A stretch of 64,000 nt of DNA, from assembly GCF_006345805.1 (NCBI RefSeq), contig NC_043013.1:41106001-41170000 (forward strand). Direction: 5' to 3'. Position numbers and translations under genes: made by a program. Of this stretch, positions 4,961-63,290 are shown in pieces. Each line of letters begins with the position of its first letter. Positions within the stretch are counted from its first letter, which is position 1. This DNA is from Octopus sinensis. Lineage: Eukaryota. A model generated the notes under the pieces. The model saw only the letters and a program-made list of their open reading frames with translations. It ran no database searches and had not been told where the DNA came from.

Positions 4961-5319
4961 AACCTAACCTCATGATCACATGTCTACATCGTAAAAACTA
5001 AACGAAAACTTCCTTTACATATATAATGCATAGTCTGCTGCTAAGAAAACCCACAACTTTCACTTCATGAAAATCCACCTTCAGACAAACACTAGATCTT
5101 AACATCTCAAACTACTATATCACCATTCAGCCTAGCAGAACGAAATATCGAAAGAAATAGCTGCAACATCAATAGCTTCACTATGCTGCGATGCACATCA
5201 TTAACATATGCAGAAGAATAGCTTAAGCGCTGGCTGAATCTACCTTATCCGTCTGCTGTTATCACCTGCAGAAACTGATGGTTTAGTGAAAAAATTATAT
5301 GGTTAATGGACAATATGTC

Positions 5320-5470
5320 CAATTTTTCGGCATTAGAATTTTTTTCCTTTGCCCTCATTTATGAATTGTTCATAAATTTAACCGTTAAAGGTATTTTTTA
5401 ATATGCTGGCCATTGATAAAATTCTTTTCGAGAAAATACTTTTTTTCGAAAAGAATTTTATCCTCACATT
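5320..5470 (-). repeat. Old, diverged fragment of the 470-bp repeat unit seen at 38428-39314
   Basis: The reverse complement aligns by eye to ATAGGATAAAATT...TATCAATGGCCAGCATAT...GGGCA...AATTCTAATGCC of the 470-bp unit. Confidence 0.7.
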
Positions 5471-6212
5471 TGATATATATGTATATATATATATATATCG
5501 TACATATTTCTCTTGAAATAAAATTTTTTAAAGGAATCCTTCGAAAAGTGGCTAACTATTCTAAATTCATCCGAGAATAATGCACGGAAAAAGATGAAGC
5601 TGCCCTTTGTGCATATGAAGAAATATCTAAATTACACCCACAACCAACACGTGCGAACGAACGAACACTCCTGTATCCGAGTAGAATAAATTGTTATAAA
5701 GACAATTTGAAAGTCTCGATTCTCATGTTTTCAGTGAACGCTTCGTTACGTATAAAATCTTTATAACATTTCGCATACAAAAATCGATATAAGTTTTAAA
5801 ATATTTTGACATTAAGTAAACAGAGTAACACAATAAATCCAATAACTTGCTCAATATCATTGCATTCTTTTATTTACGATATTTAGCAGATATGAACTGA
5901 AGGCGTGATAATGAAAGCATCAATAGCACTAATATAGGATACAGAACTGAAGCTATATTGACCATATTTCTAAGCTGTATCATTCACCTCTTCACATTTA
6001 CATACAAAAAGTTACTTTTAACTTTTTGAAGTATTAAGGTTTGACACCCGAGTCGCACCGAAGGTAGAGATAAGAGAAAGGTCTTTACCCAGCAGCTGAA
6101 GGGCTAATAGCTGGTTTGATTGATTCAATCGTACTAGGTTGGAAATTAAGGATATGCTAACCATTGAAAATGTCTGCTGGTTAGGAAAGCAGTTGCGCGC
6201 ATTATATATATA

Positions 6213-7952
6213 TTTTTTCTCTAGTTTCAGCACAGAGCTGCGGCCATGCTGATGCACCGCCGTTTTGAGCTACACTGTTATTACGAAGAACCTCGTCTAA
6301 TATGTGGCACTTGGTGAAGAGTGGAGTTTGATATAGCTACTATCATTTGCACCTCTTGCCTGAGGTAGGTTCATCTGGGACTCTCGACAGGAAGATGTCC
6401 AGCTTTGATTTAAAAACCGCTACATCTACTTTATGCAAGTTCCTCAGACTCTTTGGGAGAATATTAAAAAGCTGTGGGCTCTTGAAACCCAGGCTGTTGT
6501 AGAAGCTGGTCTTGAAGCGTGATGGCATTGCTGGGATCTTTGGCACTATGCAGTGTCGTCCCGTTCTAGCATTGGTGTAGCTTACAAGGCCAAAATTTGG
6601 CACAATTCCTTCCAGGATCTTCCAGACATATATTACTGCATACCTCTCCCGTCTTCTCTCCAGGGAGTAGAGTCTTAGCTGTTTCAACCTTTCCCAGTAG
6701 CTGAGCTGTTGCAAAAAGACGATCTTCTTTGTGAATCTTCTCTGTATTGCTTCAAGGTCCGCTGTTAATTTTACACTGGTGGGTGACCATAGCTGTGAGC
6801 AGTAATCCAGGCAGCTGAGGACGAATGTCCGCCAGAGGACCATCATGGTTTCCTTATCTCTGGTTCTGAATGTTCTTAGGATCCACCCAGCCAGTCGTCT
6901 GCACTTTGTCGCCATCCTGGTAATGTGCACTTGGAAAGAGGTATCATCACTCATGTCGATACCCAGGTCCCTCACAGACAGTCTCTGGGATTGAAATTCC
7001 CTGTGGACCGGTGTATCCTGTAAGTTTAATATTTAGTTTTGGATGCTGGTAGCGCAGGGCCTGGAATTTTTCAGCATTAAACTGCATATTATTATCCTCA
7101 GCCCATCTGTAGATTGAGTCCAACTCCTGCTGCAGGTGTGCAACATCGCTGGGGTTCTGTATTTTCTGCGAGACTTTCGTATCGTCTGCATAGCTGGCCA
7201 GAGTGGCTATCCGGGCATATTTGAGAGGGCCACTATAAAAAGCAGTGGTCCCAAGACAGTGCCCTGTGGAACACCGCTCACTATTTGTGTGTTCATAGAG
7301 GTGGCTCCATTAACCACTACTGCCTGACTCCTATCTTTCAGGAAGTCATGCAACCACACCAAGTTTTCCAGCTATGCCGAGGTCACGCAGTTTGTGGCAT
7401 ATCATACCATGATCCACCTTGTCAAAAGCTTTTGCAAAATCAAGGTAGATTACATCCACATTTGATTTGTTGAGTAACTGCCTCAACACTCAGTCATAAT
7501 GCTGTAAGAGCTGGGTCAGGCAGCTCCTACCTGGTCGAAAACCATGCTGGGTATCACTCAGCAAGTTATTTTCCTCAAGGAATGCGATTAGTTTCTTTCT
7601 GACTATCCTTTCCATGACTTTGCTGATGTGTGAAGTCGGAGAGATAGGCTTATAGTTTTTGGCATCTGCTCTACTTCCCCCTTTATGTATTGGGCATATT
7701 ATTCCCTCCTTCAGCTTGCTTGGCAGTTTGCCATTCGCAAGAAAGTTCTGGAAGAGAATCTTGAGGGGTTTTGCCAGGGCATGCTTACACGCTTTGAGGA
7801 GGATGGCTGGGAAACCATCTGGACCAGCAGCTGAGTGTGTCAACTTCATCTATGGCTAGTAGGACATCTTTTTCGCTAACGTCAATACATTCTATTGTAA
7901 CCGCCTCGCTGGTTATAGGTGAGGCGGCAAAGAAGTCCACTGGTTCGTTCAC
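6213..7952 (-). mobile_element. 5'-truncated non-LTR retrotransposon (CR1/L2-type LINE): ORF2 RT domain plus 3' UTR
   Basis: Minus-strand translation gives AAGPDGFPAILLK, NYKPISPTSHISKVMERIV, QHGFRPGRSCLTQLL, DVIYLDFAKAFDKVDHG, GVPQGTVLGPLLF, YADD (7181-7192), LGIDMSDDTSF...LDYCSQLWSP...LYSLERRRER. Lesions: premature TGA at 7490-7492 and frameshifts near 7211 and 7850. The ORF ends at 6343, followed by a 3' UTR of about 130 bp. Confidence 0.95.
6343..7952 (-). pseudogene. Disrupted LINE reverse transcriptase coding region
   Basis: ORF-track pieces 7785-7982, 7490-7849 and 6343-6975 are collinear parts of one RT; manual translation fills 6976-7489. Confidence 0.9.
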
Positions 7953-19544: not shown

Positions 19545-19965
19545 TTCTACTAGAGGTACAAGGCCTGAAATTTGGGGGAGGGGGCCAGACGATTAGATCA
19601 ACTCAGTATGCAACTGGTACTTAATTTATCGACCCCGAAAGGATAAAAGGTAAAGTCGACCTCGGCTAAAGGATAATAGGTAAAGTCGACGTCGGCGGAT
19701 TTTGAACTCAGAACATAAAGACAGATGAAATACCTATTTCTTTACTACCCACAAGGGGCTAAACACAGACAGGATAAACAAGGACAGACAAAGGGATTAA
19801 GTCGATTATATCGACCTCAGAGCGTGACTGGTACTTATTTAATCGACCCAGAAAGGATGAAAGGTAAAGTGGACCTCGGCGGAGTTTGAACACAGAACGT
19901 AGCGGCAGACGAAATACTGCAAAGTATTTCGCCCGGCGTGCTAACCTTTTTGCCAACTCACCGCC
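19545..19965 (-). mobile_element. SINE family C, long form with internally duplicated body
   Basis: Two TTTATCGACCC..AAAGGATGAAAGG.AAAGT.GACCTCGGC..A.TTTGAAC modules separated by GAAATACCTATTTCTTTACTACCCACAAGGGGCTAAACACAG; head ends GCCAACTCACCGCC. Confidence 0.85.
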
Positions 19966-22899: not shown

Positions 22900-23620
22900 A
22901 ATCATTAAAGCGTTGCAAATATAAATTGCGGTGTTTGCTCCGAGTCTTTTACATTTTGAGTTCAAATCCCGCTAAGGTCATCTTTGCCTTTCATAAATTT
23001 GGAATCGATAAAATAACAACATATTAATGAAGTATTGGGGTCAACGAAATGACTAAATTCATAGCCCTAAAATTGCTGGCCCTGTGCCAAAATTTGAAAC
23101 CGTTAATATCATTATCTCAGTATTAAGTTTTCTCAGCTTAAGTTTTCTGGTTAGTTAACTAGAAGATATTTTCAGGTAATTTGTGTATATTAGCCTTTTG
23201 CGTGTCGTAGCTGTGTGGTAAGAAACTTTCATCCCAACCACATCGTTCCGAGTTCAGTTCCACAGCGTGGCACCTTAGGCAAGTGTCTTCTACTATAGCT
23301 TCGGTCCGAGAAAAGCCTTGTGAGTGGATTTGGTAGACAGAGACTGAAAGGGGGCTCGTCGTTTATGTATATATATATGGGTCGAAACAGGGGCAGCTGA
23401 TGAGGGGGGATTTTCCTTGTATTGCTTGTCCTGTACTCTGTTTTTTCGTTGTTAAAAAAAGTCCGTTTCCTTGTTTGATTTTATGTTTTCGTTTCTCGTT
23501 GTGTTCTACGTTTATTTGTGGTGTCCTCTACTCATATATGCATGTATATATACATATAGATGTAGGTGTGTACATATATGTATGTATGTATGTATGCATG
23601 TGTTTTATTTATCAAATTGT

Positions 23621-23666
<46 letters not shown>

Positions 23667-23785
23667 ACAATCAAGGAACGGCCATAATAGGCCATTCACC
23701 CACTAGAAATAACAGCCAAAGCTTCAACCGCAAATAAAAGTCAATTCCGTAAACAGGAGAAAATTTAAAAAACATTTACCCTGTA

Positions 23786-23892
23786 ATTTCTTATACGATG
23801 CACCGTTTCGTCTGCTGTTTAATGGTAAACTAACCTGATTAAATTAAATCAAGCCAATCTTCCATAGGCCCTCAGATTCTTCAGTAAGAAAT
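23786..23892 (-). ncRNA. Type I hammerhead ribozyme motif (inverted copy)
   Basis: Reverse complement of 24100-24206. Confidence 0.75.
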
Positions 23893-24099
23893 AGCCACAA
23901 GTCGGAACAGATATTTTCACGAGGCATTTCCGACCCTGCCAAGTTAATATCTGACCTAAAATTTTCAAATCATCGCACTCGCGCCAAATTTATCGGCAGC
24001 AAATAAATATAAGCCGTCGATTCCATTACGGAATTAACCAGAAAATTCATAATTAATCAATATAGGGTGGCAAAAAAATATCTGTTCCGACTTGTGGCT

Positions 24100-24206
24100 A
24101 TTTCTTACTGAAGAATCTGAGGGCCTATGGAAGATTGGCTTGATTTAATTTAATCAGGTTAGTTTACCATTAAACAGCAGACGAAACGGTGCATCGTATA
24201 AGAAAT
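24100..24206 (+). ncRNA. Type I hammerhead ribozyme motif with long stem II
   Basis: Stem I ATTTCTTA/TAAGAAAT (8 bp); core CTGAAGA (24108-24114); stem II TCTG/CAGA enclosing a long hairpin; GAAA (24183-24186); stem III ACGG-TGCA-TCGT; GUA cleavage triplet with the predicted cut after 24198. Caveat: A10.1 opposes C11.1. Confidence 0.75.
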
Positions 24207-24591
24207 TACAGGGTAAATGCTTTTTAAATTTTCTCCTGTTTACGGAATTGACTTTTATTTGCGGTTGAAGCTTTGGCTGTTATTTCTAGTGGGTGAATGG
24301 CCTATTATGGCCGTTCCTTGATTGTTGATATTGAACTTAAAAATGGTCTATGACTATTTAATTTTTTCCCACTAGGCCGCTGGTGGCAAAAAAATTCTAC
24401 AAAATTTTTTTTGCCACCCTATATTGATTAATTATGAATTTTCTGGTTAATTCCGTAATGGAATCGACGGCTTATATTTATTTGCTGCCGATAAATTTGG
24501 CGCGAGTGCGATGATTTGAAAATTTTAGGTCAGATATTAACTTGGCAGGGTCGGAAATGCCTCGTGAAAATATCTGTTCCGACTTGTGGCT

Positions 24592-24698
24592 ATTTCTTAC
24601 TGAAGAATCTGAGGGCCTATGGAAGATTGGCTTGATTTAATTTAATCAGGTTAGTTTACCATTAAACAGCAGACGAAACGGTGCATCGTATAAGAAAT
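24592..24698 (+). ncRNA. Type I hammerhead ribozyme motif (second plus-strand copy)
   Basis: Same sequence as 24100-24206, 492 bp downstream; predicted cut after 24690. Confidence 0.75.
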
Positions 24699-25036
24699 TA
24701 CAGGGTAAATGTTTTTTAAATTTTCTCCTGTTTACGGAATTGACTTTTATTTGCGGTTGAAGCTTTGGCTGTTATTTCTAGTGGGTGAATGGCCTATTAT
24801 GGCCGTTCCTTGATTGTTGATGTTGAACTTAAAAATGGTCTATGACTATTTAATTTTTTCCCACTAGGCCGCTGGTGGCAAAAAAATTCTACAAAATTTT
24901 TTTTGCCACCCTATATTGATTAATATATATATATATATATATATAATCACATCAAAGGGAAATGGAAATAAATTAAAATTTACCTTTCCAGTGGTCTAAT
25001 GTGTAAAGATTTAGTCAAAATGACTATATATTAGTT

Positions 25037-25163
25037 ATACGATATAGTGTATATTTAAACACATAAGAAATCCACTTATAAGAATTCTACACGGTGTTGT
25101 TTCTAGCGTGTAGAATTCATAAAAGTGGATTCCTTATGTGTTTAAATATACACTATATCGTAT
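25037..25163. repeat. Near-perfect 127-bp hairpin (57-bp arms, 13-nt loop), probable tiny MITE
   Basis: ATACGATATAGTGTATATTTAAACACATAAG...GAATTCTACACG, loop GTGTTGTTTCTAG, then CGTGTAGAATTC...CTTATGTGTTTAAATATACACTATATCGTAT with about 3 mismatches. Confidence 0.85.
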
Positions 25164-25267: not shown

Positions 25268-25754
25268 TGTGTCTATGTTTGTCCGTCACCACTGCTTGAC
25301 AACTAGCGTTGGTGTGTTTATGTCCCCTTAACTTAGCAGCTCGGTAAGAGGAAACGGATAGAATAAATACCAAGCTTAATAAAAAAGAAATTGAATAAGT
25401 GCTGGAGCTTCAATGCTCCAACATGGCCGCAGTCTAATGACTGATAGAAAAAAGACAAATCTGAGAGATTAGAAGATTATTCTATCTCGCCCCACTCCTC
25501 TCTCCCCCCTTCTATCTCCCCCCTTCTCTCTCCCTGGTACTTAATTTTAATAACTTGTTTGTCTGTTTTGTTAGCAGAACGAAATATTTTCGGTCAGAAT
25601 TCGCCCCAATGATTTCTTGCATTCACACACACACACACACACACGCACATTCACACATTCACACACACAGAAACATCTATACATATACATACATTCTTAC
25701 ACATACACACACACAAACACACATATATGCATATATATATATATATTCTTTTAT

Positions 25755-37474: not shown

Positions 37475-37601
37475 AAATACAAAATGGGACAAGAACGCAA
37501 AACATTCAAATAGACGATACAAAAAACACGGACGGGTCATTCGAAGCCTCTAATCTTCAGTCAAGAACCGGATCATCTCGCGATTTTCGGCTGATTAATC
37601 T

Positions 37602-37635
<34 letters not shown>

Positions 37636-37664
37636 TATATATATATATATTATTATATATAGTT

Positions 37665-37865
37665 AATCCAAACATGAAACACAAAGAGAAAACACAACAA
37701 CGCAAGAACGTGGAACAAGCATAGTTTTATAGGACGCTCAGGAAAGGAAAGAAAGAAGGAGGATTTAACGTTTCGAGCGGAGCTCTTCGTCAGAAACATA
37801 GGAAAAGGAAAGATCCAAGGAAGGGAAGACGGAGGAAGAAATCGCCAACGATACACACGCGGTCA
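37665..37865 (-). mobile_element. Penelope-like tail repeat with hammerhead
   Basis: Embedded in (TA)n; contains the motif at 37763-37797. Confidence 0.65.
37763..37797 (-). ncRNA. Minimal type I hammerhead motif
   Basis: GUUU CUGACGA A GAGC UCC GCUC GAAAC GUU AAAU: stem I GUUU/AAAU, stem II GAGC/GCUC, palindromic AACGUU in place of stem III. Confidence 0.7.
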
Positions 37866-38340
37866 CATTACATATATTATATATATATATATATATACAT
37901 ACATGTGCACGGGACGATCCAAAATGCCGAAAAGCAATGGAACTACATTTCATCAAAAAATTCTCTCTAAAATTGAATGTTTTAAAGAAAAGCAGAAATA
38001 GTACAATTCGTGTTATACTAAAGTTCTTTAAAGCAAAGTCATGGAACTGAAAGAGGTATGATCGAAGTTACACAGTATAAACATGGACATGTTCCCAAAC
38101 ACACACACAGACGCGCACGCACACACACTCAGATGTGCACGCGCGCACGCGCACGCGCACAAATATATGTGTGTATGTATGTATATATACATGTATATAT
38201 ATATATGTATGTATGTATATATGTTATATATATATATATATATATAGTGTGTGTGTGTGTGTGTGTATATATATGTATATAGTATATATGTATATATATA
38301 TGTATATATATTGTATATATATGTATATGTATATATATAT

Positions 38341-38390
<50 letters not shown>

Positions 38391-38640
38391 GTATAGATAT
38401 ATATGTATATATATAATGTATATATATTTAATATAGGATAAAATTTATTTCCGGAAAAATTTTTTATCAATGGCCAGCATATCAAAAAATGCCTTTAAAG
38501 GTAAAATTTATTCATAATTTACAAGATAAGGGCAGAAGAAAAATTCTAATGCCAAATATGCCGAAACAAAAAATTTTTTTGTCGATAACCATTAAAATTT
38601 ATGCGTCTCGTAATAAACCGATAGAAATCTCTAAAAATTT

Positions 38641-38711
38641 CGTTATTACCGTATTGGTCCAATTTCGGGGTTAATTCATAAGAAATTTTCTCCTCTTCAG
38701 TGGCAAATACG
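38641..38711 (-). ncRNA. Type I hammerhead motif (copy with two mismatches)
   Basis: CGUAUUUGCCA CUGAAGA GGAG...CCCC GAAA UUGGACCAAU A CGGUAAUAACG; A-C mismatches in stems I and II. Confidence 0.65.
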
Positions 38712-39117
38712 CGAGATATAAATGAAATACTTACTCATACCCAAGAAAAAGCAAACACCAAGTCCCGAGCAGACTTAAGTACCCCAAATATATCCAAAAT
38801 AGAAAAAGTCTTCGGCGCACCTCGAGACACGTGTGATTCGAACTAGAAACTTTCGCAGAGTGATAGAATCCGGAAGTGAACACTAATCTATTTATAATTA
38901 ATATAGGATAAAATTTTTTTCGGGAAAATTTTTTTATCAATGGCCAGCATATCAAAAAATGCCTTTAAAGGTAAAATTTATACATAATTTACAAGATAAG
39001 GGCAGAAGAAAAATTATAATGCCAAATATGCCGAAACAAAAAAATTTTTGTCGATAACCATTAAAACTTGGTGCTTGCTTTTTCTTGGGTATGAGTAAGT
39101 ATTTCACTTATATCTCG

Positions 39118-39188
39118 CGTATTTGCCGCTGAAGAGGGGAAAATTTCTTATGACTTAACCCCGAAATTGGACCAATACGGTAATAACG
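39118..39188 (+). ncRNA. Type I hammerhead ribozyme motif (intact copy)
   Basis: CGTATTTGCCG, CTGAAGA (39129-39135), GGGG-19 nt-CCCC, GAAA (39163-39166), stem III ATTGG-A-CCAAT, AUA triplet with predicted cut after 39177, stem I 3' strand CGGTAATAACG. Confidence 0.8.
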
Positions 39189-39313
39189 AATTTTTTAGAG
39201 ATTTCTATCGGTTTATTTCGAGACGCATAAATTTTAATGGTTATCGACAAAAAATTTTTTTGTTTCGGCATATTTGGGCTTAGAATTTTTCTTCTGCCCT
39301 TATCTTGTAAATT

Positions 39314-39334
39314 AAATGTATATATATATATAAT

Positions 39335-39378
<44 letters not shown>

Positions 39379-39451
39379 AATATGTATGTATATATGTGTA
39401 TATATACATATATTATATATGTATGTATATATATATGTATGTATATATATA

Positions 39452-39496
<45 letters not shown>

Positions 39497-39526
39497 TGTA
39501 TGTATATATATATATATGTATGTATG

Positions 39527-39568
<42 letters not shown>

Positions 39569-49487: not shown

Positions 49488-49668
49488 CATATACATACAC
49501 ATACACCTATGTATATAGTCTTAAAATAATAAAACACAAATCTTGTAAATACAAACTATCCAGGGTTTCCTGGTGGAAATGTTTAATTTATTCCACCATT
49601 TATCAAGCTGAAAACAAGACCAAATCCTTGTGGTTGGATTTACAAGGCAGACATGTATGCAAGCCCGA

Positions 49669-49699
<31 letters not shown>

Positions 49700-49704
<5 letters not shown>

Positions 49705-49900
49705 ATTTTAATCCAAACGGGAAACAAAAAAAAAAACAACAACACAGGAACAATTACAGTATTATTATTAATAGGCGCTCAGGAAATGGAAGCATGGAGT
49801 ATGACGTTTCGAGCGGAGCTCTTCGTCGGAAACATAAAGCGGAAGAAGAGGAGAGAGATCCCAGAGCGGGCAACAGGGAAAGAAAAAAGACGACTGGTGT
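49700..49900 (-). mobile_element. Penelope-like tail repeat with mutated hammerhead (49799-49833)
   Basis: GUUU CCGACGA A GAGC UCC GCUC GAAAC GUC AUAC; same family as 37763-37797. Confidence 0.6.
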
Positions 49901-52544: not shown

Positions 52545-53243
52545 CAGATTGCAATAAATGCAACGATCTGTTGCGTGTGCACACGTTACAGACTATTGGA
52601 GACAGATTGCAATAAATGCAATGATCTGTTGCGTGTGCACACGTTACAGACCATTGGAGACAGATTGCAATAAATGCAATGATCTGTTGCGCGTGCACAC
52701 GTTACAGACCATTGGAGACAGATTGCAATAAATGCAACGATCTGTTGCGTGTGCACACGTTACAGACCATTGGAGACAGATTGCAATAAATGCAACGATC
52801 TGTTGCGTGTGCACACGTTACAGACCATTGGAGACAGATTGCAATAAATGCAATGATCTGTTGCGTGTGCACACGTTACAGACCATTGGAGACAGATTGC
52901 AATAAATGCAATGATCGGTTGCGTGTGCACACGTTACAGACCATTGGAGACAGATTGCAATAAATGCAACGATCTGTTGCGTGTGCACACGTTACAGACC
53001 ATTGGAGACATATTGCAATAAATGCAACGATCTGTTGCGTGTGCACACGTTACAGACCATTGGAGACAGATTGCAATAAATGCAATGATCGGTTGCGTGT
53101 GCGCACGTTACAGACCATTGGAGACAGATTGCAATAAATGCAATGATCTGTTGCGTGTGTGCACACGTTACAGACCATTGGAGACAGATTGCAATAAATG
53201 CAACGATCTGTTGCGTGTGTACACGTTACATATCACTGGAGAT
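52545..53243. repeat. 58-bp minisatellite, 12 copies
   Basis: Unit CAGATTGCAATAAATGCAA(C/T)GATCTGTTGCGTGTGCACACGTTACAGACCATTGGAGA starting at 52545, 52603 ... 53185; highly homogeneous. Confidence 0.97.
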
Positions 53244-53890: not shown

Positions 53891-54039
53891 ACATTATTTA
53901 CATTATTTACATTTGACGGATATTTGTCCTCATCTTGTTTGTTGTTAACACAACGTTTCGGCTGATATACCCTCCAGCCTTCATCAGGTGTCTTGGGGAA
54001 ATTTCGAACCTGGGTTCTCATTCCTAAGGTATATTTCGA

Positions 54040-54104
<65 letters not shown>

Positions 54105-54169: not shown

Positions 54170-54273
54170 ATGGCGTAGTGCTCAAGAGCGCGGGCTACTA
54201 ACCTCAAGATGAAGACTGGAAGAGTATATCAGCTGAAATGTTGTGTTAACAACAAACAAGATGAGGACAAATA
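54170..54273 (+). mobile_element. Internally deleted copy of the same SINE, head-to-head with the previous one
   Basis: ATGGCGTAGTGCTCAAGAGCGCGGGCTACTAACCTCAAGAT joined to GAAGACTGGAAGAGTATATCAGCTGAAATGTTGTGTTAACAACAAACAAGATGAGGACAAATA. Confidence 0.8.
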
Positions 54274-54539: not shown

Positions 54540-55750
54540 CATCCACTTTTTGATAAACACACAAAGATGCAACACTTCTTTCCCTCTCCTCACCTTACTT
54601 CACAAACTCTTTTGCCACAGCTACCTGACAGAGAAAGACCAGCCTTGCTTCTTTAACAAAGGAAGATGGTGCATCGATCTTCACCATACACTCGGCAGAC
54701 ATTTGGTTTCTCTTACACGAGTCAATAGCTGCTCGACACAAGCCCACAATATTCCAAGACTCTAGTTGCAAACCGATTTGTCTTGGTGTATGTGTGCTCC
54801 TGTACATACCTGATATTCTTTCAGTATAATAGTGTCAATCGTTTCAAAATCCAAAGTGTGTAACACGATGACAGTGAGGTCTGGATATGTAGACACGGAT
54901 CTCCTGCGACCCTGTTTCTGCGAGATACCTTGAAACTCTCCAGCCTTCACAGCAAGGGTTCCAATGACAAAACATATAAAAACGAGGAGAGGGGCATCTT
55001 TGGCTGACCGAGTGTTCAATAGTGAAAAGTTCGAGAGGCGGTCATTTAATTTGGCCACTGAACAGATGCCACTGTACATTGTGGTGATCTAGTCCACCGA
55101 AGACGGCTTTTCGGATAGCCACCAGATAGCGATGGTCCAATCTGTCAAATGCCTTGGACTGATCCAAATTGACCGATGTTTTTCGAAAGCCAGATCTATT
55201 CCCGACACGTTCTAAGATGTTTCGCATGAGGTGGGAATTGGCGTTGATAGACCTACCGGGGATTAGACAGGTTTGCGCGTCTTCCACTACACTACTGACA
55301 AGAAGACACTTTAGCTAAAATATTTAATTCGGTGTTGAAGAGAGTTATGGGCTTGAATTTCCAGTCGCATTCCCCTTGTTCGGAACCTTCCTCAGCAGAG
55401 TTACCACTCCCCGAATGCTTTTAGATGATCCACCACGACCATTCGCATCTGCTCGCACTCTCCGAAACAGAAAATATCTTTGAGGCCATGAACTTCTTCC
55501 AGAACAACCAAAACCTGGAATTTTATTGACGTTCCTGCTCTGCTTTGTTGGGGAATTGATTTCATATTTATTACCCCCCTGTGCTCCTCCATCATGGCCA
55601 TTACTCTGGCCTGCTCAATACGAAGAGGTATGTAGCCCTGACTTTGGTCACACGACATTCCATGTATAAAGGGAGCATCACGCACTGCTCAGACAAGCAG
55701 GTCATTGTAGCCAGCCTAGGCGCGGGTCATTGTAGTCAACTTAGGTGCTT
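54540..55750 (-). pseudogene. Highly decayed Tx1/L1-clade reverse transcriptase
   Basis: QTCLIPGRSINANSHLMRNILERVG...VNLDQSKAFDRLDHRYL; downstream RRSVSTYPDLTVIV (degenerate YADD region) ...LKEYQVCTGAHIHQDKSV. Confidence 0.8.
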
Positions 55751-61766: not shown

Positions 61767-63290
61767 TTACCGTTTTTTTAACCTATCTCTCTCTGTTTTA
61801 CTTCTTGTTTTTTGTTTTCCTCGCAATTTCTTCCTTTTACCATCTCTATGTTGTTCCAAAACCTCTCTCCGCTGTGGTCCTTTCATCTGTATGCTTTCGC
61901 ACTCTTGCTTGTCTGTGCATTTATCCGACTGCACTTTCTCGTCCTCTTTCTGTGTGTCTTTCTCACGAGAGTCTAGGCATTTTTGTTCAACTTCCTCGTC
62001 GCTTTGTAATTCCACCTCTGTTTCTGGTGTCTCTGTTGATGGTTCCTCAACATATTCTGTTCTTTGTTGCATTTCCTCCTCCATTGCTCCTCTTTATCTC
62101 TGCTGTTCTTGGAGACTTCTTTCGGATCTTTTCGCTTTGACCGGTAGATTTAAAAAATAATTTCTTTGTAACTAAACACAAATAATTGTTGTTGTCAAAG
62201 ATTCGGAGAGATTGTATTCACCTCAATAGACGTCATTGACTGGTTGAAATTGCCGAAATGCAAGGAATTAAACACCAAATATCTTACAAACTATAGAACT
62301 TTCTCAAGAAAGCCAAGAGAAAAAGATGTTTTATAAACTCATTCTACCAGTATACGAAGTTTAAAAGTGTTTAGTTACAAAGAAATTATTTTAAAAATCT
62401 GCCGGTCAAAGCGAAAAGATCCCTTCTTTCTTTCTCTTTTCCTGCTTTTTGTCTCTGCCTGTTTTTCTCTATGTGTCATAACAGCTATATCTGCGTATCT
62501 TAATAACTCCCCCTCCAGACAATTTTTAAGTTTATGTCCTCTCTTGCCGCATTTGTAACATTTGGGTGGTCTTCCTGTCAGTATTATCTCCAACCTCTCT
62601 CCCGTTGGCAGCTCTATTGTTTCTGGTACTTTCTCATAATACACTGGGGTTATAGTTCCGACAATTTCTAAACTAAATCCCCCAAAATTGCTGCATTCGG
62701 TCTTGCTCCCTAACTGAATCTCCAGTTCTGAGTTTTTCTCCTGCAGTCTTTCGCCACAAATGCCCACTATCACCCACTCAGGCTCTATCATTGGTGGTAT
62801 TCGCCCAACTTTGATTTTTTCTAATTTTTTCCCCGGTGTGCATGGTAATAGCGTCCATTTGTCTCCTTCTATCACGTCTTTAGCGTTCTGTGCTGTCTCT
62901 TCTTCCGTTCCAAATGTTACTGCAACTGTCCCGTAATATTTTTCTTTTGTGATGAAAATTATTTCCTCGTCAATACAGCTCATTATTAGATCTTCTATTT
63001 CATTTTCTGGGGCTCTCTCAACCTTTCTGTTCTCATTAGAAAATGTTCTAAAAATTACTGTTTTTTCTTTCCTCTTTCGTTTTCTCTTCTTCTGGCATGA
63101 CTAGTTTTATGTTCGTTCCTTCTAGTTTCACCATTTTGCTGTACTTCCTCAACTTGTCCATATCGCACTCTATATTCACATCCTCTATCTTGTATGTGTT
63201 CTCGGTTTCCTGCGCTTTGGCGATCTCCGCATACGTCTTCATTTCTTCAGCTTCTCTCGCACCGCCTAACATGACATGACGGTTTCGCAT
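61767..63290 (-). pseudogene. Disrupted gag/ORF1-like protein (Tx1/L1 ORF1p-like) with CX2CX4HX4C knuckle
   Basis: Track ORFs 63048-63290 and 62375-62983 join through a frameshift in a poly-A run (...EERK/TVIFRTFSNE...); GRPPKCYKCGKRGHKLKNC; MITE insertion at 62124-62422; charged low-complexity tail at 61767-62084. Confidence 0.75.
62124..62422. mobile_element. MITE (299 bp) with about 56-bp TIRs and perfect 8-bp TSD CTTCTTTC (Merlin-like)
   Basis: GGATCTTTTCGCTTTGACCGGTAGATTTAAAAAATAATTTCTTTGTAACTAAACAC / GTGTTTAGTTACAAAGAAATTATTTTAAAAATCTGCCGGTCAAAGCGAAAAGATCC; TSD at 62116-62123 and 62423-62430. Confidence 0.9.

What the first reader, a model, noticed from the sequence alone, without database searches (positions are those of the whole stretch)
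23661..24924. Retrozyme-like array: 492-bp tandem unit, each copy carrying a type I hammerhead ribozyme
Every unit contains stem I ATTTCTTA/TAAGAAAT, core CUGAAGA, a long structured stem II (TCTG/CAGA enclosing ATGG/CCAT, GATTGG/TTAGTT and CTTGATT/AATCAGG helices), GAAA, a self-complementary stem III (ACGG-UGCA-UCGU) and a GUA site. The two plus-strand sites (after 24198 and 24690) are exactly one unit apart, so a read-through transcript would release a 492-nt monomer able to circularise. This is the known logic of non-LTR retrozymes, which are non-coding and thought to be mobilised by Penelope-like RTs. Copies are almost identical (recent), there is no ORF, and a second hairpin GGTGGCAAAAAAA..TTTTTTTGCCACC is present. 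I do not recognise this family as described; the unit seems longer than the few-hundred-nt metazoan retrozymes I recall, and the very long stem II is unusual.
Basis: partly seen in the sequence, partly recalled or inferred. Interest (0 to 1): 0.92.

Follow-up and report, generated by a model that had tools for sequence, protein, structure and literature searches.

The report
Hammerhead retrozyme with Penelope-type insertion scar
This is a very young, non-coding mobile element carrying a hammerhead self-cleaving RNA motif, a new member of the known animal "retrozyme" class, and its layout suggests it was pasted into a TA microsatellite by a Penelope-like retrotransposon enzyme.

Summary
The sequence features are real, but the locus is not a plain tandem array. 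Window 23661-24924 holds an inverted, truncated copy (23661-24078, minus strand). It is joined head-to-head to 1.73 direct copies of a 492-nt unit (24075-24924). All copies are 99.4-100% identical and sit inside a (TA)n microsatellite.

Each copy carries a type I hammerhead motif with a complete core. The + strand cleavage sites (after 24198 and 24690) are exactly 492 nt apart. A strict hammerhead descriptor found 4 hits in the window and none in 200 shuffles.

The fourth hit is a different 470-nt family at 38429-39314. It has the same inverted-plus-partial-tandem layout in (TA)n and a canonical G10.1-C11.1 pair.

This layout, the (TA)n target and the one-sided 3' extension are published marks of Penelope-like element (PLE) insertion.

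Weak points:
- Rfam hammerhead models do not match.
- The 492-nt family has an A10.1·C11.1 mismatch.
- No diverged relatives could be retrieved, so covariation, cleavage and circular RNA are untested.
- A 492-nt unit is within the published range (51-972 bp).

Verdict: new member of a known kind, moderate interest.

The parts
23624..23664 (.). Left (TA)n flank of the target microsatellite
   Evidence: TRF reports period 2, 20.5 copies, 100% matches; sequence.
23661..24078 (-). Inverted, 5'-truncated copy of the 492-nt unit (unit positions 332-492 plus 1-257). Its sense 3' end at 23661 stops 101 nt short of the unit's 3' terminus and lacks the terminal hairpin.
   Evidence: blastn of the unit against the window; inverted repeats I1 and I2, 99-100% complementary; 1 mismatch against each direct copy.
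23786..23892 (-). Hammerhead motif of the inverted copy (core starts at 23884, cleavage after 23794, read on the minus strand)
   Evidence: Descriptor scan.
24075..24566 (+). Full 492-nt unit (family F1). The 4-7 nt A-rich stretch at 24075-24081 is shared with the inverted copy (microhomology junction).
24100..24206 (+). Type I hammerhead copy 1. Helix I is 24100-24107 paired with 24199-24206. Core CUGAAGA is 24108-24114. Helix II is 24115-24182, with A10.1·C11.1 followed by UCUG/CAGA. GAAA is 24183-24186. Helix III is the palindrome ACGGUGCAUCGU. H17 is A at 24198.
   Evidence: The hammerhead-constrained fold is only 0.8 kcal/mol above the MFE.
24382..24418 (+). A/T-run hairpin of the 3' module (internal copy), followed by CTATATTGATTAAT
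24567..24924 (+). Partial second unit (positions 1-358), ending 14 nt after the hairpin
24592..24698 (+). Type I hammerhead copy 2 (cleavage after 24690)
24874..24924 (+). Terminal hairpin plus CTATATTGATTAAT. This is the 3' end of the insertion and the inferred start site of reverse transcription.
   Evidence: The same hairpin-plus-CTATATT arrangement ends family F2.
24925..24947 (.). Right (TA)n flank
38429..39069 (-). Separate locus, family F2 (470-nt unit): 1.36-unit partial tandem in minus sense. Its 3' end is the hairpin GATAAAA...TTTTATC plus CTATATTAA, abutting (TA)n 38163-38435.
38641..38711 (-). F2 hammerhead in the tandem part, decayed. Two G-to-A changes break pairs 2.1/1.1 and 10.3/11.3.
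   Evidence: Alignment.
39066..39314 (+). F2 inverted truncated copy. It ends 86 nt short of the unit's 3' terminus and abuts (TA)n 39319-39568.
   Evidence: Inverted repeat I1, 96% complementary.
39118..39188 (+). Intact F2 type I hammerhead. Helix I is 6 bp, then a 2x2 internal loop, then 3 bp. Core is CUGAAGA. Helix II is GGGG/CCCC with canonical G10.1-C11.1 and a 19-nt loop. GAAA follows. Helix III is the near-palindrome AUUGGACCAAU. Cleavage is AUA, after 39177.
5316..5474 (+). 5'-truncated F2-like fragment (F3), 80% identical to F2 positions 343-459. It has a perfect 17-bp version of the 3' hairpin (5415-5462), then CTCACATTTGAT, then (AT)n.

Best explanation
Window 23661-24924 is most likely one recent insertion of a non-coding, non-autonomous retroelement of the animal 'non-LTR retrozyme' kind, meaning a hammerhead-bearing parasite or derivative of Penelope-like elements (PLEs).

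Inferred life cycle:
1. A transcript spanning more than one unit carries two hammerheads. Helix III is too short to fold alone and is self-complementary, so the two motifs pair with each other as a double hammerhead.
2. Cleavage after GUA at both sites releases a 492-nt, highly structured monomer. A host RNA ligase can then circularise it.
3. A PLE reverse transcriptase/GIY-YIG endonuclease supplied in trans cuts both strands of an AT-rich target, here (TA)n. It primes cDNA synthesis from both DNA ends.
4. On one end synthesis starts just 3' of a conserved A/T-run hairpin (unit position 358). It runs for 1.73 units on a circular or multimeric template.
5. On the other end synthesis starts about 100 nt further upstream (position 257) and runs for 418 nt.
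6. The two cDNAs are joined head-to-head through a few bases of microhomology.

Shown here: the sequence anatomy, that the motif is non-random, the insertion layout, and its recurrence in a second family. Inferred: transcription, cleavage, circularisation, and which enzyme did the insertion.
For: Motif:
- All invariant core positions are present in type I topology in all three F1 copies.
- The strict descriptor gave 4 hits and 0 in 200 shuffles.
- The hammerhead-constrained fold is within 0.8-1.0 kcal/mol of the MFE.
- Helix III as a hairpin gives -1.2 (F1) and 0 (F2) kcal/mol. As a homodimer it gives -19.5 and -10.9 kcal/mol. Published metazoan and PLE hammerheads act as dimers in the same way.

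Independent second family (F2):
- It keeps the same core (CUGAAGA, GAAA, UA) while all three helices have different sequences, and it has G10.1-C11.1.
- The two units do not align overall (42% identity).

Layout:
- An inverted truncated copy plus a partial tandem of more than one unit occurs at both loci.
- All three related insertions end in (TA)n.
- At both loci the inverted copy ends 101 or 86 nt short of the hairpin-bearing 3' end.
- The two cDNA 5' ends meet at a microhomology junction.

Published PLE marks that match:
- Partial tandems, an adjacent inverted 5'-truncated copy, a one-sided tail and (TA)n bias (PMC8557442).
- Cleavage and extension of both strands, internal start of reverse transcription in a stem-loop, and two start sites that define the tail (PMC11167929).

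Class traits:
- Non-coding.
- 36% GC.
- Monomer fold z-score of -5.4.
- Hammerhead on one polarity only.

Context:
- Two further PLE-type minimal hammerheads lie in the window (3 hits against 0.06 expected).

Age:
- There are 2 substitutions among the three F1 copies, none shared. This fits a single recent event.
Against: - No Rfam hammerhead model matches either motif. This held at gathering score and at E<=10, even in ~100-nt searches.
- F1 has A10.1·C11.1 at the most conserved helix II pair. The literature reports the U·U mismatch as better tolerated than any other mispair at this position (PMC3088659), so F1 may cleave poorly or need a protein.
- Helix I is 8 bp and helix II is 68 nt, so the usual loop 1/loop 2 contacts cannot be assigned.
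- No diverged F1 copies could be retrieved, so there is no within-family covariation and no expression evidence.
- No PLE ORF was seen among the ORFs and segments examined in the window. That search was not exhaustive.
- The 86-101 nt extension is longer than the published 30-40 nt tail.
Confidence: 0.75

Rival explanations
1. The unit is an internally deleted Penelope-like element, that is pLTR/UTR sequence left after loss of the ORF. It is not an independent retrozyme lineage that lives through a circular RNA. In this reading the hammerhead is a passenger and is not needed for mobilisation.
For: PLE pLTRs carry hammerheads. PLEs without canonical hammerheads still proliferate. Retrozymes are reported to be sister to PLE pLTRs. 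The F1 hammerhead has a weakened 10.1/11.1 pair, yet the element inserted very recently.
Against: Two independent families keep a full hammerhead core while everything else differs. Both direct copies exceed one unit, as expected from a circular or multimeric template. In practice this rival overlaps the best explanation and differs mainly in whether cleavage and circles matter.
Confidence: 0.15
2. The element is a DNA transposon derivative, such as a TA-targeting MITE or foldback element, or a Helitron. The hammerhead-like motif is then incidental.
For: The insertion sits in TA repeats. There is a large internal inverted repeat. A hairpin lies about 14 nt before the right end, and the left end begins TC after an A.
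Against: There are no terminal inverted repeats at either locus; local alignment scores of the ends do not exceed shuffles. The inverted repeat is offset about 100 nt from the right end. The right end is not CTRR. Locus 2 has neither a TC 5' end nor a CTRR 3' end in either orientation. A 5'-truncated copy with an intact 3' end points to reverse transcription. The motif's chance expectation is below 0.005 per window.
Confidence: 0.04
3. The structure is an assembly or library artefact, for example a foldback chimera or a collapsed or expanded repeat, or a local DNA-level palindromic duplication unrelated to retrotransposition.
For: The copies are nearly identical in inverted and tandem order. 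PLE-type structures are known to trouble assemblies.
Against: The three copies each differ at private positions. The same layout occurs at locus 2, where the copies have diverged by 4%. Both outer ends fall at specific unit positions inside (TA)n.
Confidence: 0.04

Closest known systems
Animal non-LTR retrozymes (Cervera & de la Peña 2020, PMC7229834; Li, Clavereau & Pollet 2026 preprint, 10.64898/2026.07.22.740005)
   Same: Non-coding and low GC. There is a head-to-tail repeat with one type I hammerhead per unit on one polarity. The monomer is highly self-paired. Helix III is short and palindromic, implying dimeric cleavage. PLEs are the proposed mobilisers. The unit length is within the reported 51-972 bp range.
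   Different: Only 1.73 direct units are present, plus an inverted partial copy. My keyword searches of those two papers found no discussion of inverted copies or microsatellite targets. F1 has A10.1·C11.1 and a 68-nt helix II. The host appears to be a cephalopod; this is my recollection of the flanking SINE and was not tested. Neither paper mentions cephalopods.
Penelope-like elements: pLTR hammerheads and insertion layout (Cervera & de la Peña 2014, PMC4209133; Craig et al. 2021, PMC8557442; Frangieh et al. 2024, PMC11167929)
   Same: A partial tandem with an adjacent inverted 5'-truncated copy. A one-sided 3' extension. (TA)n or AT-rich targets. A stem-loop at the start site of reverse transcription. 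A hammerhead with a palindromic helix III.
   Different: There is no RT/GIY-YIG ORF. F1 and F2 have a real, if short, helix III and loop, and they lack the extra nucleotide between A9 and 10.1 that marks PLE minimal hammerheads. The extension is 86-101 nt rather than 30-40 nt.
Newt satellite 2 / axolotl HHR_Amex repeats and Schistosoma Sm-alpha
   Same: A type I hammerhead sits in a repeated non-coding unit of about 330-350 nt. Helix III is weak, so efficient cleavage needs two motifs. One axolotl family has a mismatch (U·U) at the base of helix II.
   Different: Those form long arrays or dispersed SINE-like copies in very high numbers, with 4-bp helix II and conserved loop-loop contacts. Here helix II is long (F1) or has a 19-nt loop (F2), and copy number is unknown.
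Plant LTR retrozymes
   Same: A non-autonomous retroelement that makes a circular RNA through flanking hammerheads.
   Different: Plant elements have type III hammerheads inside LTRs, a PBS and PPT, 4-bp target duplications, more than 55% GC, and Gypsy-type mobilisation. None of these is seen here.

Membership tests
Hammerhead ribozyme, type I | Invariant core C3 U4 G5 A6 N7 G8 A9 / G12 A13 A14 / A15.1-U16.1 / H17 (not G) | tested here: met
   F1 reads CUGAAGA...GAAA...U-A. F2 has the same core..
Hammerhead ribozyme, type I | Three helices around the core, with helix I open and helices II and III closed | tested here: met
   Descriptor scan. The MFE predicts helices I and II. The full hammerhead fold is 0.8-1.0 kcal/mol above the MFE.
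Hammerhead ribozyme, type I | G10.1-C11.1 base pair | tested here: not met
   F1 has A10.1·C11.1 in all three copies. F2 has G-C. This is a near-universal feature rather than an absolute one; U·U variants are active.
Hammerhead ribozyme, type I | Match to the curated covariance models (Rfam Hammerhead_1 and relatives) | tested here: not met
   No hammerhead family was listed at gathering score or at E<=10, even in 96-126-nt searches.
Hammerhead ribozyme, type I | Compensatory changes in the helices among relatives | tested here: inconclusive
   The F1 copies are 99-100% identical, and no other copies could be retrieved. Between the unrelated F1 and F2, all helices differ while the core is kept. 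That is suggestive but is not within-family covariation.
Hammerhead ribozyme, type I | Site-specific self-cleavage | not testable with these tools
   Needs in vitro transcription of monomer and dimer templates.
Animal non-LTR retrozyme | Head-to-tail repeats of a few hundred bp with one type I hammerhead per unit on the same strand | tested here: met
   Two + strand motifs lie 492 nt apart. Only 1.73 units are present.
Animal non-LTR retrozyme | Non-coding, low GC, no LTR/PBS/PPT | tested here: met
   ORFs are at most 39 aa, or 52 aa stop-to-stop. GC is 36%. There are no terminal direct repeats beyond the tandem itself. PBS and PPT were not searched for specifically.
Animal non-LTR retrozyme | Monomer RNA is highly self-paired | tested here: met
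   The 492-nt monomer has an MFE of -144.2 kcal/mol and a z-score of -5.4 against 100 shuffles.
Animal non-LTR retrozyme | Expressed as linear and circular monomer RNA | not testable with these tools
   No transcriptome data for the source organism could be reached.
PLE-mobilised (non-autonomous Penelope-like) insertion | Partial tandem with an adjacent inverted 5'-truncated copy | tested here: met
   Locus 1 and locus 2.
PLE-mobilised (non-autonomous Penelope-like) insertion | AT-rich or microsatellite target, so no definable target-site duplication | tested here: met
   (TA)n flanks both sides of loci 1 and 2 and the 3' side of F3.
PLE-mobilised (non-autonomous Penelope-like) insertion | Optional 'tail' present at one end only, reflecting two start sites for reverse transcription | tested here: inconclusive
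   The 3' ends differ by 101 nt (F1) and 86 nt (F2) between the direct and inverted copies. The pattern is the same as published, but the length is about three times the published 30-40 nt.
PLE-mobilised (non-autonomous Penelope-like) insertion | Sequence relationship to the pLTR or 3' end of an autonomous PLE in the same genome | not testable with these tools
   The source genome is not searchable here. No PLE ORF was seen among the ORFs and segments examined in the window.
TA-targeting MITE / foldback DNA transposon | Terminal inverted repeats | tested here: not met
   Alignment scores of the ends are 6 and 8, against shuffle means of 5.7 and 6.8.

The most novel reading that the evidence does not exclude
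These loci may preserve unusually clean insertion scars. If so, they show directly that retrozyme RNAs are integrated by PLE-type priming from both target strands at (TA)n, on a circular or multimeric template. They would also show that an A/T-run hairpin followed by CTATATT/TTGATTAA at the 3' end is the cis element through which the PLE enzyme captures unrelated hammerhead-bearing RNAs. That module is shared by otherwise unalignable families. In addition, F1 would be an active natural hammerhead variant with A10.1·C11.1 and a 68-nt helix II, perhaps assisted by a protein.
Probability: 0.3. Interest if true: 0.6.

Novelty: new member of a known kind. Interest (0 to 1): 0.4.

Why it matters
Animal retrozymes are known, but the claim that PLEs mobilise them rests mainly on co-occurrence and pLTR similarity. 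A very young insertion (2 substitutions in about 1.27 kb) shows the full PLE scar, and an unrelated family repeats it 14 kb away. This gives structural evidence for the PLE link. It also yields a concrete in vitro test: retrozyme RNA, a (TA)n target and purified PLE protein. The shared 3' hairpin module is a candidate recognition element. The F1 motif is a natural test of how much the 10.1/11.1 pair and helix II length matter. The window also suggests that many (TA)n tracts in this genome are tied to hammerhead-bearing retroelements.

Tried and rejected
Searches for relatives, all empty or uninformative:
- Exact-protein look-ups of the short F1 ORFs and of two larger window ORFs found nothing on record.
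- A concatenation of all stop-to-stop F1 peptides searched against the 5.8-billion-protein set gave no hit.
- A 19-mer from the hammerhead 3' half, scanned against metagenome contigs, gave 3 GC-rich bacterial chance matches with no extended similarity.
- Three scans of viral contigs found nothing.
- A 21-mer conserved between F2 and F3, scanned against prokaryotic genomes, gave 4 matches in bacterial MAGs with no extended similarity.

Rfam:
- No hammerhead family appeared at any threshold. The miRNA-like hits were AT-rich hairpins and microsatellites.

Organism:
- A LINE RT fragment found only anonymous metagenome proteins (at most 68% identity) and crustacean proteins at 47%. The source species is therefore unconfirmed. 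My impression that the flanking SINE is octopus-like is from memory only.

Other checks:
- F1 and F2 do not align overall (42% identity).
- The shared 8-mer CCTATATT is not rare in the window (7 found, 4.6 expected). Only its position next to the hairpin and the 3' end is notable, and that observation is post hoc.
- Terminal inverted repeats are absent. Helitron termini do not fit locus 2.
- Pfam on six long ORFs and ten further segments found no PLE RT or GIY-YIG domain. It found only a weak RVT_1 hit in a LINE-type fragment.
- ARAGORN found no tRNA.
Full report
**1. What is there**

Window 23661-24924 is a 1264-bp block inside a (TA)n microsatellite (TA runs at 23624-23664 and 24925-24947). 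It is built from one 492-nt unit, but not as a simple array.
- 24075-24566 is a full unit.
- 24567-24924 is unit positions 1-358, with 2 mismatches.
- 23661-24078 is an inverted copy on the minus strand, covering unit positions 332-492 followed by 1-257.

TRF does not report the repeat because only 1.73 direct copies exist. The three copies differ at two positions only, unit positions 146 and 256, and each change is private to one copy. This fits a single, very recent origin. The longest ORF is 39 aa with a start codon, or 52 aa stop-to-stop. The unit is 36% GC. No other copy of the unit lies in the window.

**2. The hammerhead motif**

Each copy reads: AUUUCUUA / CUGAAGA / A-UCUG...CAGA-C / GAAA / CGG-UGCA-UCG / U-A, then UAAGAAAU.
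- All invariant core positions are present.
- Helix I is 8 bp. A 3-nt bulge and a 6-bp extension follow.
- Helix II runs from UCUG/CAGA through an internal loop and AUGG/CCAU into a 14-bp hairpin.
- Helix III is 3 bp plus the A15.1-U16.1 pair, with a UGCA loop.
- Cleavage would fall after 24198 and 24690 on the + strand, 492 nt apart, and after 23794 on the minus strand.

I wrote an RNAmotif-style descriptor and ran it on both strands of the window and on dinucleotide shuffles. With helix I >=6, helix II >=4 and helix III >=3 there were 4 hits, against none in 200 shuffles.

The hammerhead-constrained fold lies 0.8 kcal/mol above the MFE. The 492-nt monomer is strongly structured, with a z-score of -5.4.

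Helix III is almost worthless as a hairpin (-1.2 kcal/mol). The 12-nt ACGGUGCAUCGU is self-complementary and forms a -19.5 kcal/mol duplex with a second copy. This is the double-hammerhead arrangement described for most metazoan type I and PLE hammerheads.

**3. Points against the motif**

- No Rfam hammerhead model matches. This held at gathering score and at E<=10, even when only ~100 nt were searched.
- F1 has A10.1·C11.1 where G-C is almost universal. The literature reports the U·U mismatch as better tolerated than any other mispair here.
- With no diverged copies, there is no within-family covariation.

**4. A second, independent family**

The fourth descriptor hit is at 39129 (core), with cleavage after 39177.
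- It has a 6-bp helix I, then an internal loop and 3 more pairs.
- Helix II is GGGG/CCCC with canonical G10.1-C11.1.
- Helix III is the near-palindrome AUUGGACCAAU.

It lies in a 470-nt family (F2) at 38429-39314 that does not align with F1 (42% identity). Yet the layout is the same:
- a 1.36-unit partial tandem (minus sense, 39069 down to 38429);
- joined head-to-head to an inverted truncated copy (39066-39314);
- the whole inside (TA)n (38163-38435 and 39319-39568).

Here the copies differ by about 4%. The hammerhead in the tandem part has two pair-breaking G-to-A changes, while the one in the inverted copy is intact.

A third, 5'-truncated F2-like fragment sits at 5316-5474. It is 80% identical and its 3' end is again in (AT)n.

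**5. Shared 3' module and two 3' ends**

In F1, F2 and F3 the sense 3' end is an A/T-run hairpin immediately followed by a short motif and then the TA target:
- F1: CTATATTGATTAAT
- F2: CTATATTAA
- F3: CTCACATTTGAT

The hairpin stems differ: GGTGGCAAAAAAA/TTTTTTTGCCACC in F1, GATAAAA/TTTTATC in F2, and a perfect 17 bp in F3. The structure and its position are kept.

The hammerhead cleavage site lies 234 nt (F1) and 223 nt (F2) upstream of that end.

At both loci the inverted copy does not reach this end. It stops 101 nt (F1, unit position 257) or 86 nt (F2) earlier, at AU-rich positions that could pair with a (TA)n primer.

The two copies meet at their 5' ends through a few shared bases: AAAA(T)AT at 24075-24081, and ACTT at 39066-39069.

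**6. Interpretation**

These features match published marks of Penelope-like element integration:
- partial tandems;
- an adjacent inverted 5'-truncated copy;
- a tail at one end only;
- a bias for (TA)n (Craig et al. 2021).

In vitro, an anole PLE protein cleaves and extends both target strands. It prefers AT-rich DNA and starts reverse transcription internally at two sites in or near a stem-loop; the stretch between those sites corresponds to the tail (Frangieh et al. 2024).

Non-coding tandem units with a type I hammerhead are the published animal non-LTR retrozymes. PLEs were proposed as their mobilisers, and a 2026 preprint argues they derive from PLE pLTRs, with consensus lengths of 51-972 bp.

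The locus is therefore best read as a new retrozyme-type family whose insertion scar points to PLE machinery. Direct copies longer than one unit imply a circular or multimeric RNA template. Locus 1 has two same-strand motifs, so a read-through transcript could release a 492-nt monomer. Locus 2 could not.

**7. Rivals**

- A MITE or foldback element is rejected. There are no terminal inverted repeats, and the internal inverted repeat is offset about 100 nt from one end.
- Helitron ends do not fit locus 2.
- An assembly artefact is unlikely, given the private substitutions and the diverged but identically arranged locus 2.
- An ORF-less PLE derivative whose hammerhead is dispensable cannot be excluded. 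It overlaps the main reading.

**8. Context**

A relaxed PLE minimal-hammerhead descriptor gave 3 hits against 0.06 expected. Besides F2, the hits are:
- A textbook minimal motif on the minus strand at 53952-53995, with an extra nucleotide after A9, G10.1-C11.1 and GAAACGU. It has a decayed inverted partner at 54208-54273.
- A motif of about 130 nt at 37765-37800, with a second copy at 49671-49836. Both copies end in GGATTAA plus (TA)n, and their hammerhead segment is 100% conserved against 75-79% overall.

No PLE ORF was found among the ORFs and segments examined in the window. Published octopus repeat surveys list Penelope families. Assigning this window to an octopus rests only on my recollection of the flanking SINE. 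The one homology search gave no species.

**9. Verdict**

The retrozyme/PLE reading is supported by anatomy and by a second family. Activity and circles are untested. The length is not exceptional, and the class is known. I rate it a new member of a known kind, with moderate interest. The interest comes from the clean PLE-type scar, the shared 3' hairpin module and the unusual helix II.

Noticed in passing
window 38429-39314: A second hammerhead-bearing family (470-nt unit) has the same inverted-plus-partial-tandem layout inside (TA)n. Its + strand hammerhead (cleavage after 39177) has canonical G10.1-C11.1. The copies have diverged by about 4%.
   Followed up: yes
window 5316-5474: A 5'-truncated fragment is 80% identical to the 3' part of the 470-nt family. 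It has a perfect 17-bp version of the 3' hairpin and ends in (AT)n.
   Followed up: partly
window 53921-53995 (minus) and 54208-54273 (plus): A textbook PLE-type minimal hammerhead (CUGAUGA, extra A, GGCUG/CAGCC, GAAACGU) lies just downstream of what looks like a tRNA-derived SINE head. A CpG-decayed inverted partner sits on the other side of a (TTA)n run at 54042-54100. ARAGORN calls no tRNA there.
   Followed up: partly
window 37600-37830 (minus) and 49650-49870 (minus): Two copies of an element of about 130 nt begin at a minimal hammerhead (CUGACGA-A-GAGC/GCUC-GAAACGU) and end in GTTTGGATTAA plus (TA)n. The 24-nt hammerhead segment is identical between copies, although the copies are only 75-79% alike overall. 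One copy has U4 changed to C.
   Followed up: partly
window 25037-25163: A 127-nt near-perfect palindrome (57-nt arms, 95% complementary, 13-nt loop) lies about 110 nt downstream of the element. It looks like a MITE or hairpin and draws weak miRNA-model hits in Rfam far below gathering score.
   Followed up: no
window 52545-53242: A minisatellite: 12 copies of a 58-nt unit at 96% identity.
   Followed up: no
window 23195-23360, 25280-25460, 19638-19696: SINE-like repeats that I recall as typical of octopus genomes. The window is also extremely rich in (TA)n, (TGTA)n and (CA)n microsatellites. The species was not confirmed by any tool.
   Followed up: no
window 6343-6975 (minus), 54598-55688 (minus), 62375-62983 (minus): There are degraded LINE-type reverse transcriptase fragments and a gag-like ORF with a weak zinc-knuckle match. 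The first RT fragment has over 1000 relatives, 68% identity at best, all anonymous or crustacean. None looks PLE-like.
   Followed up: partly
window-wide: Every hammerhead-bearing insertion found here has its 3' end in an AT dinucleotide repeat, and the 3' termini resemble each other (TTGATTAAT, TGGATTAA, TTTGAT, TATTAA). This raises the question of whether such elements target (TA)n tracts in this genome or help to seed them.
   Followed up: no
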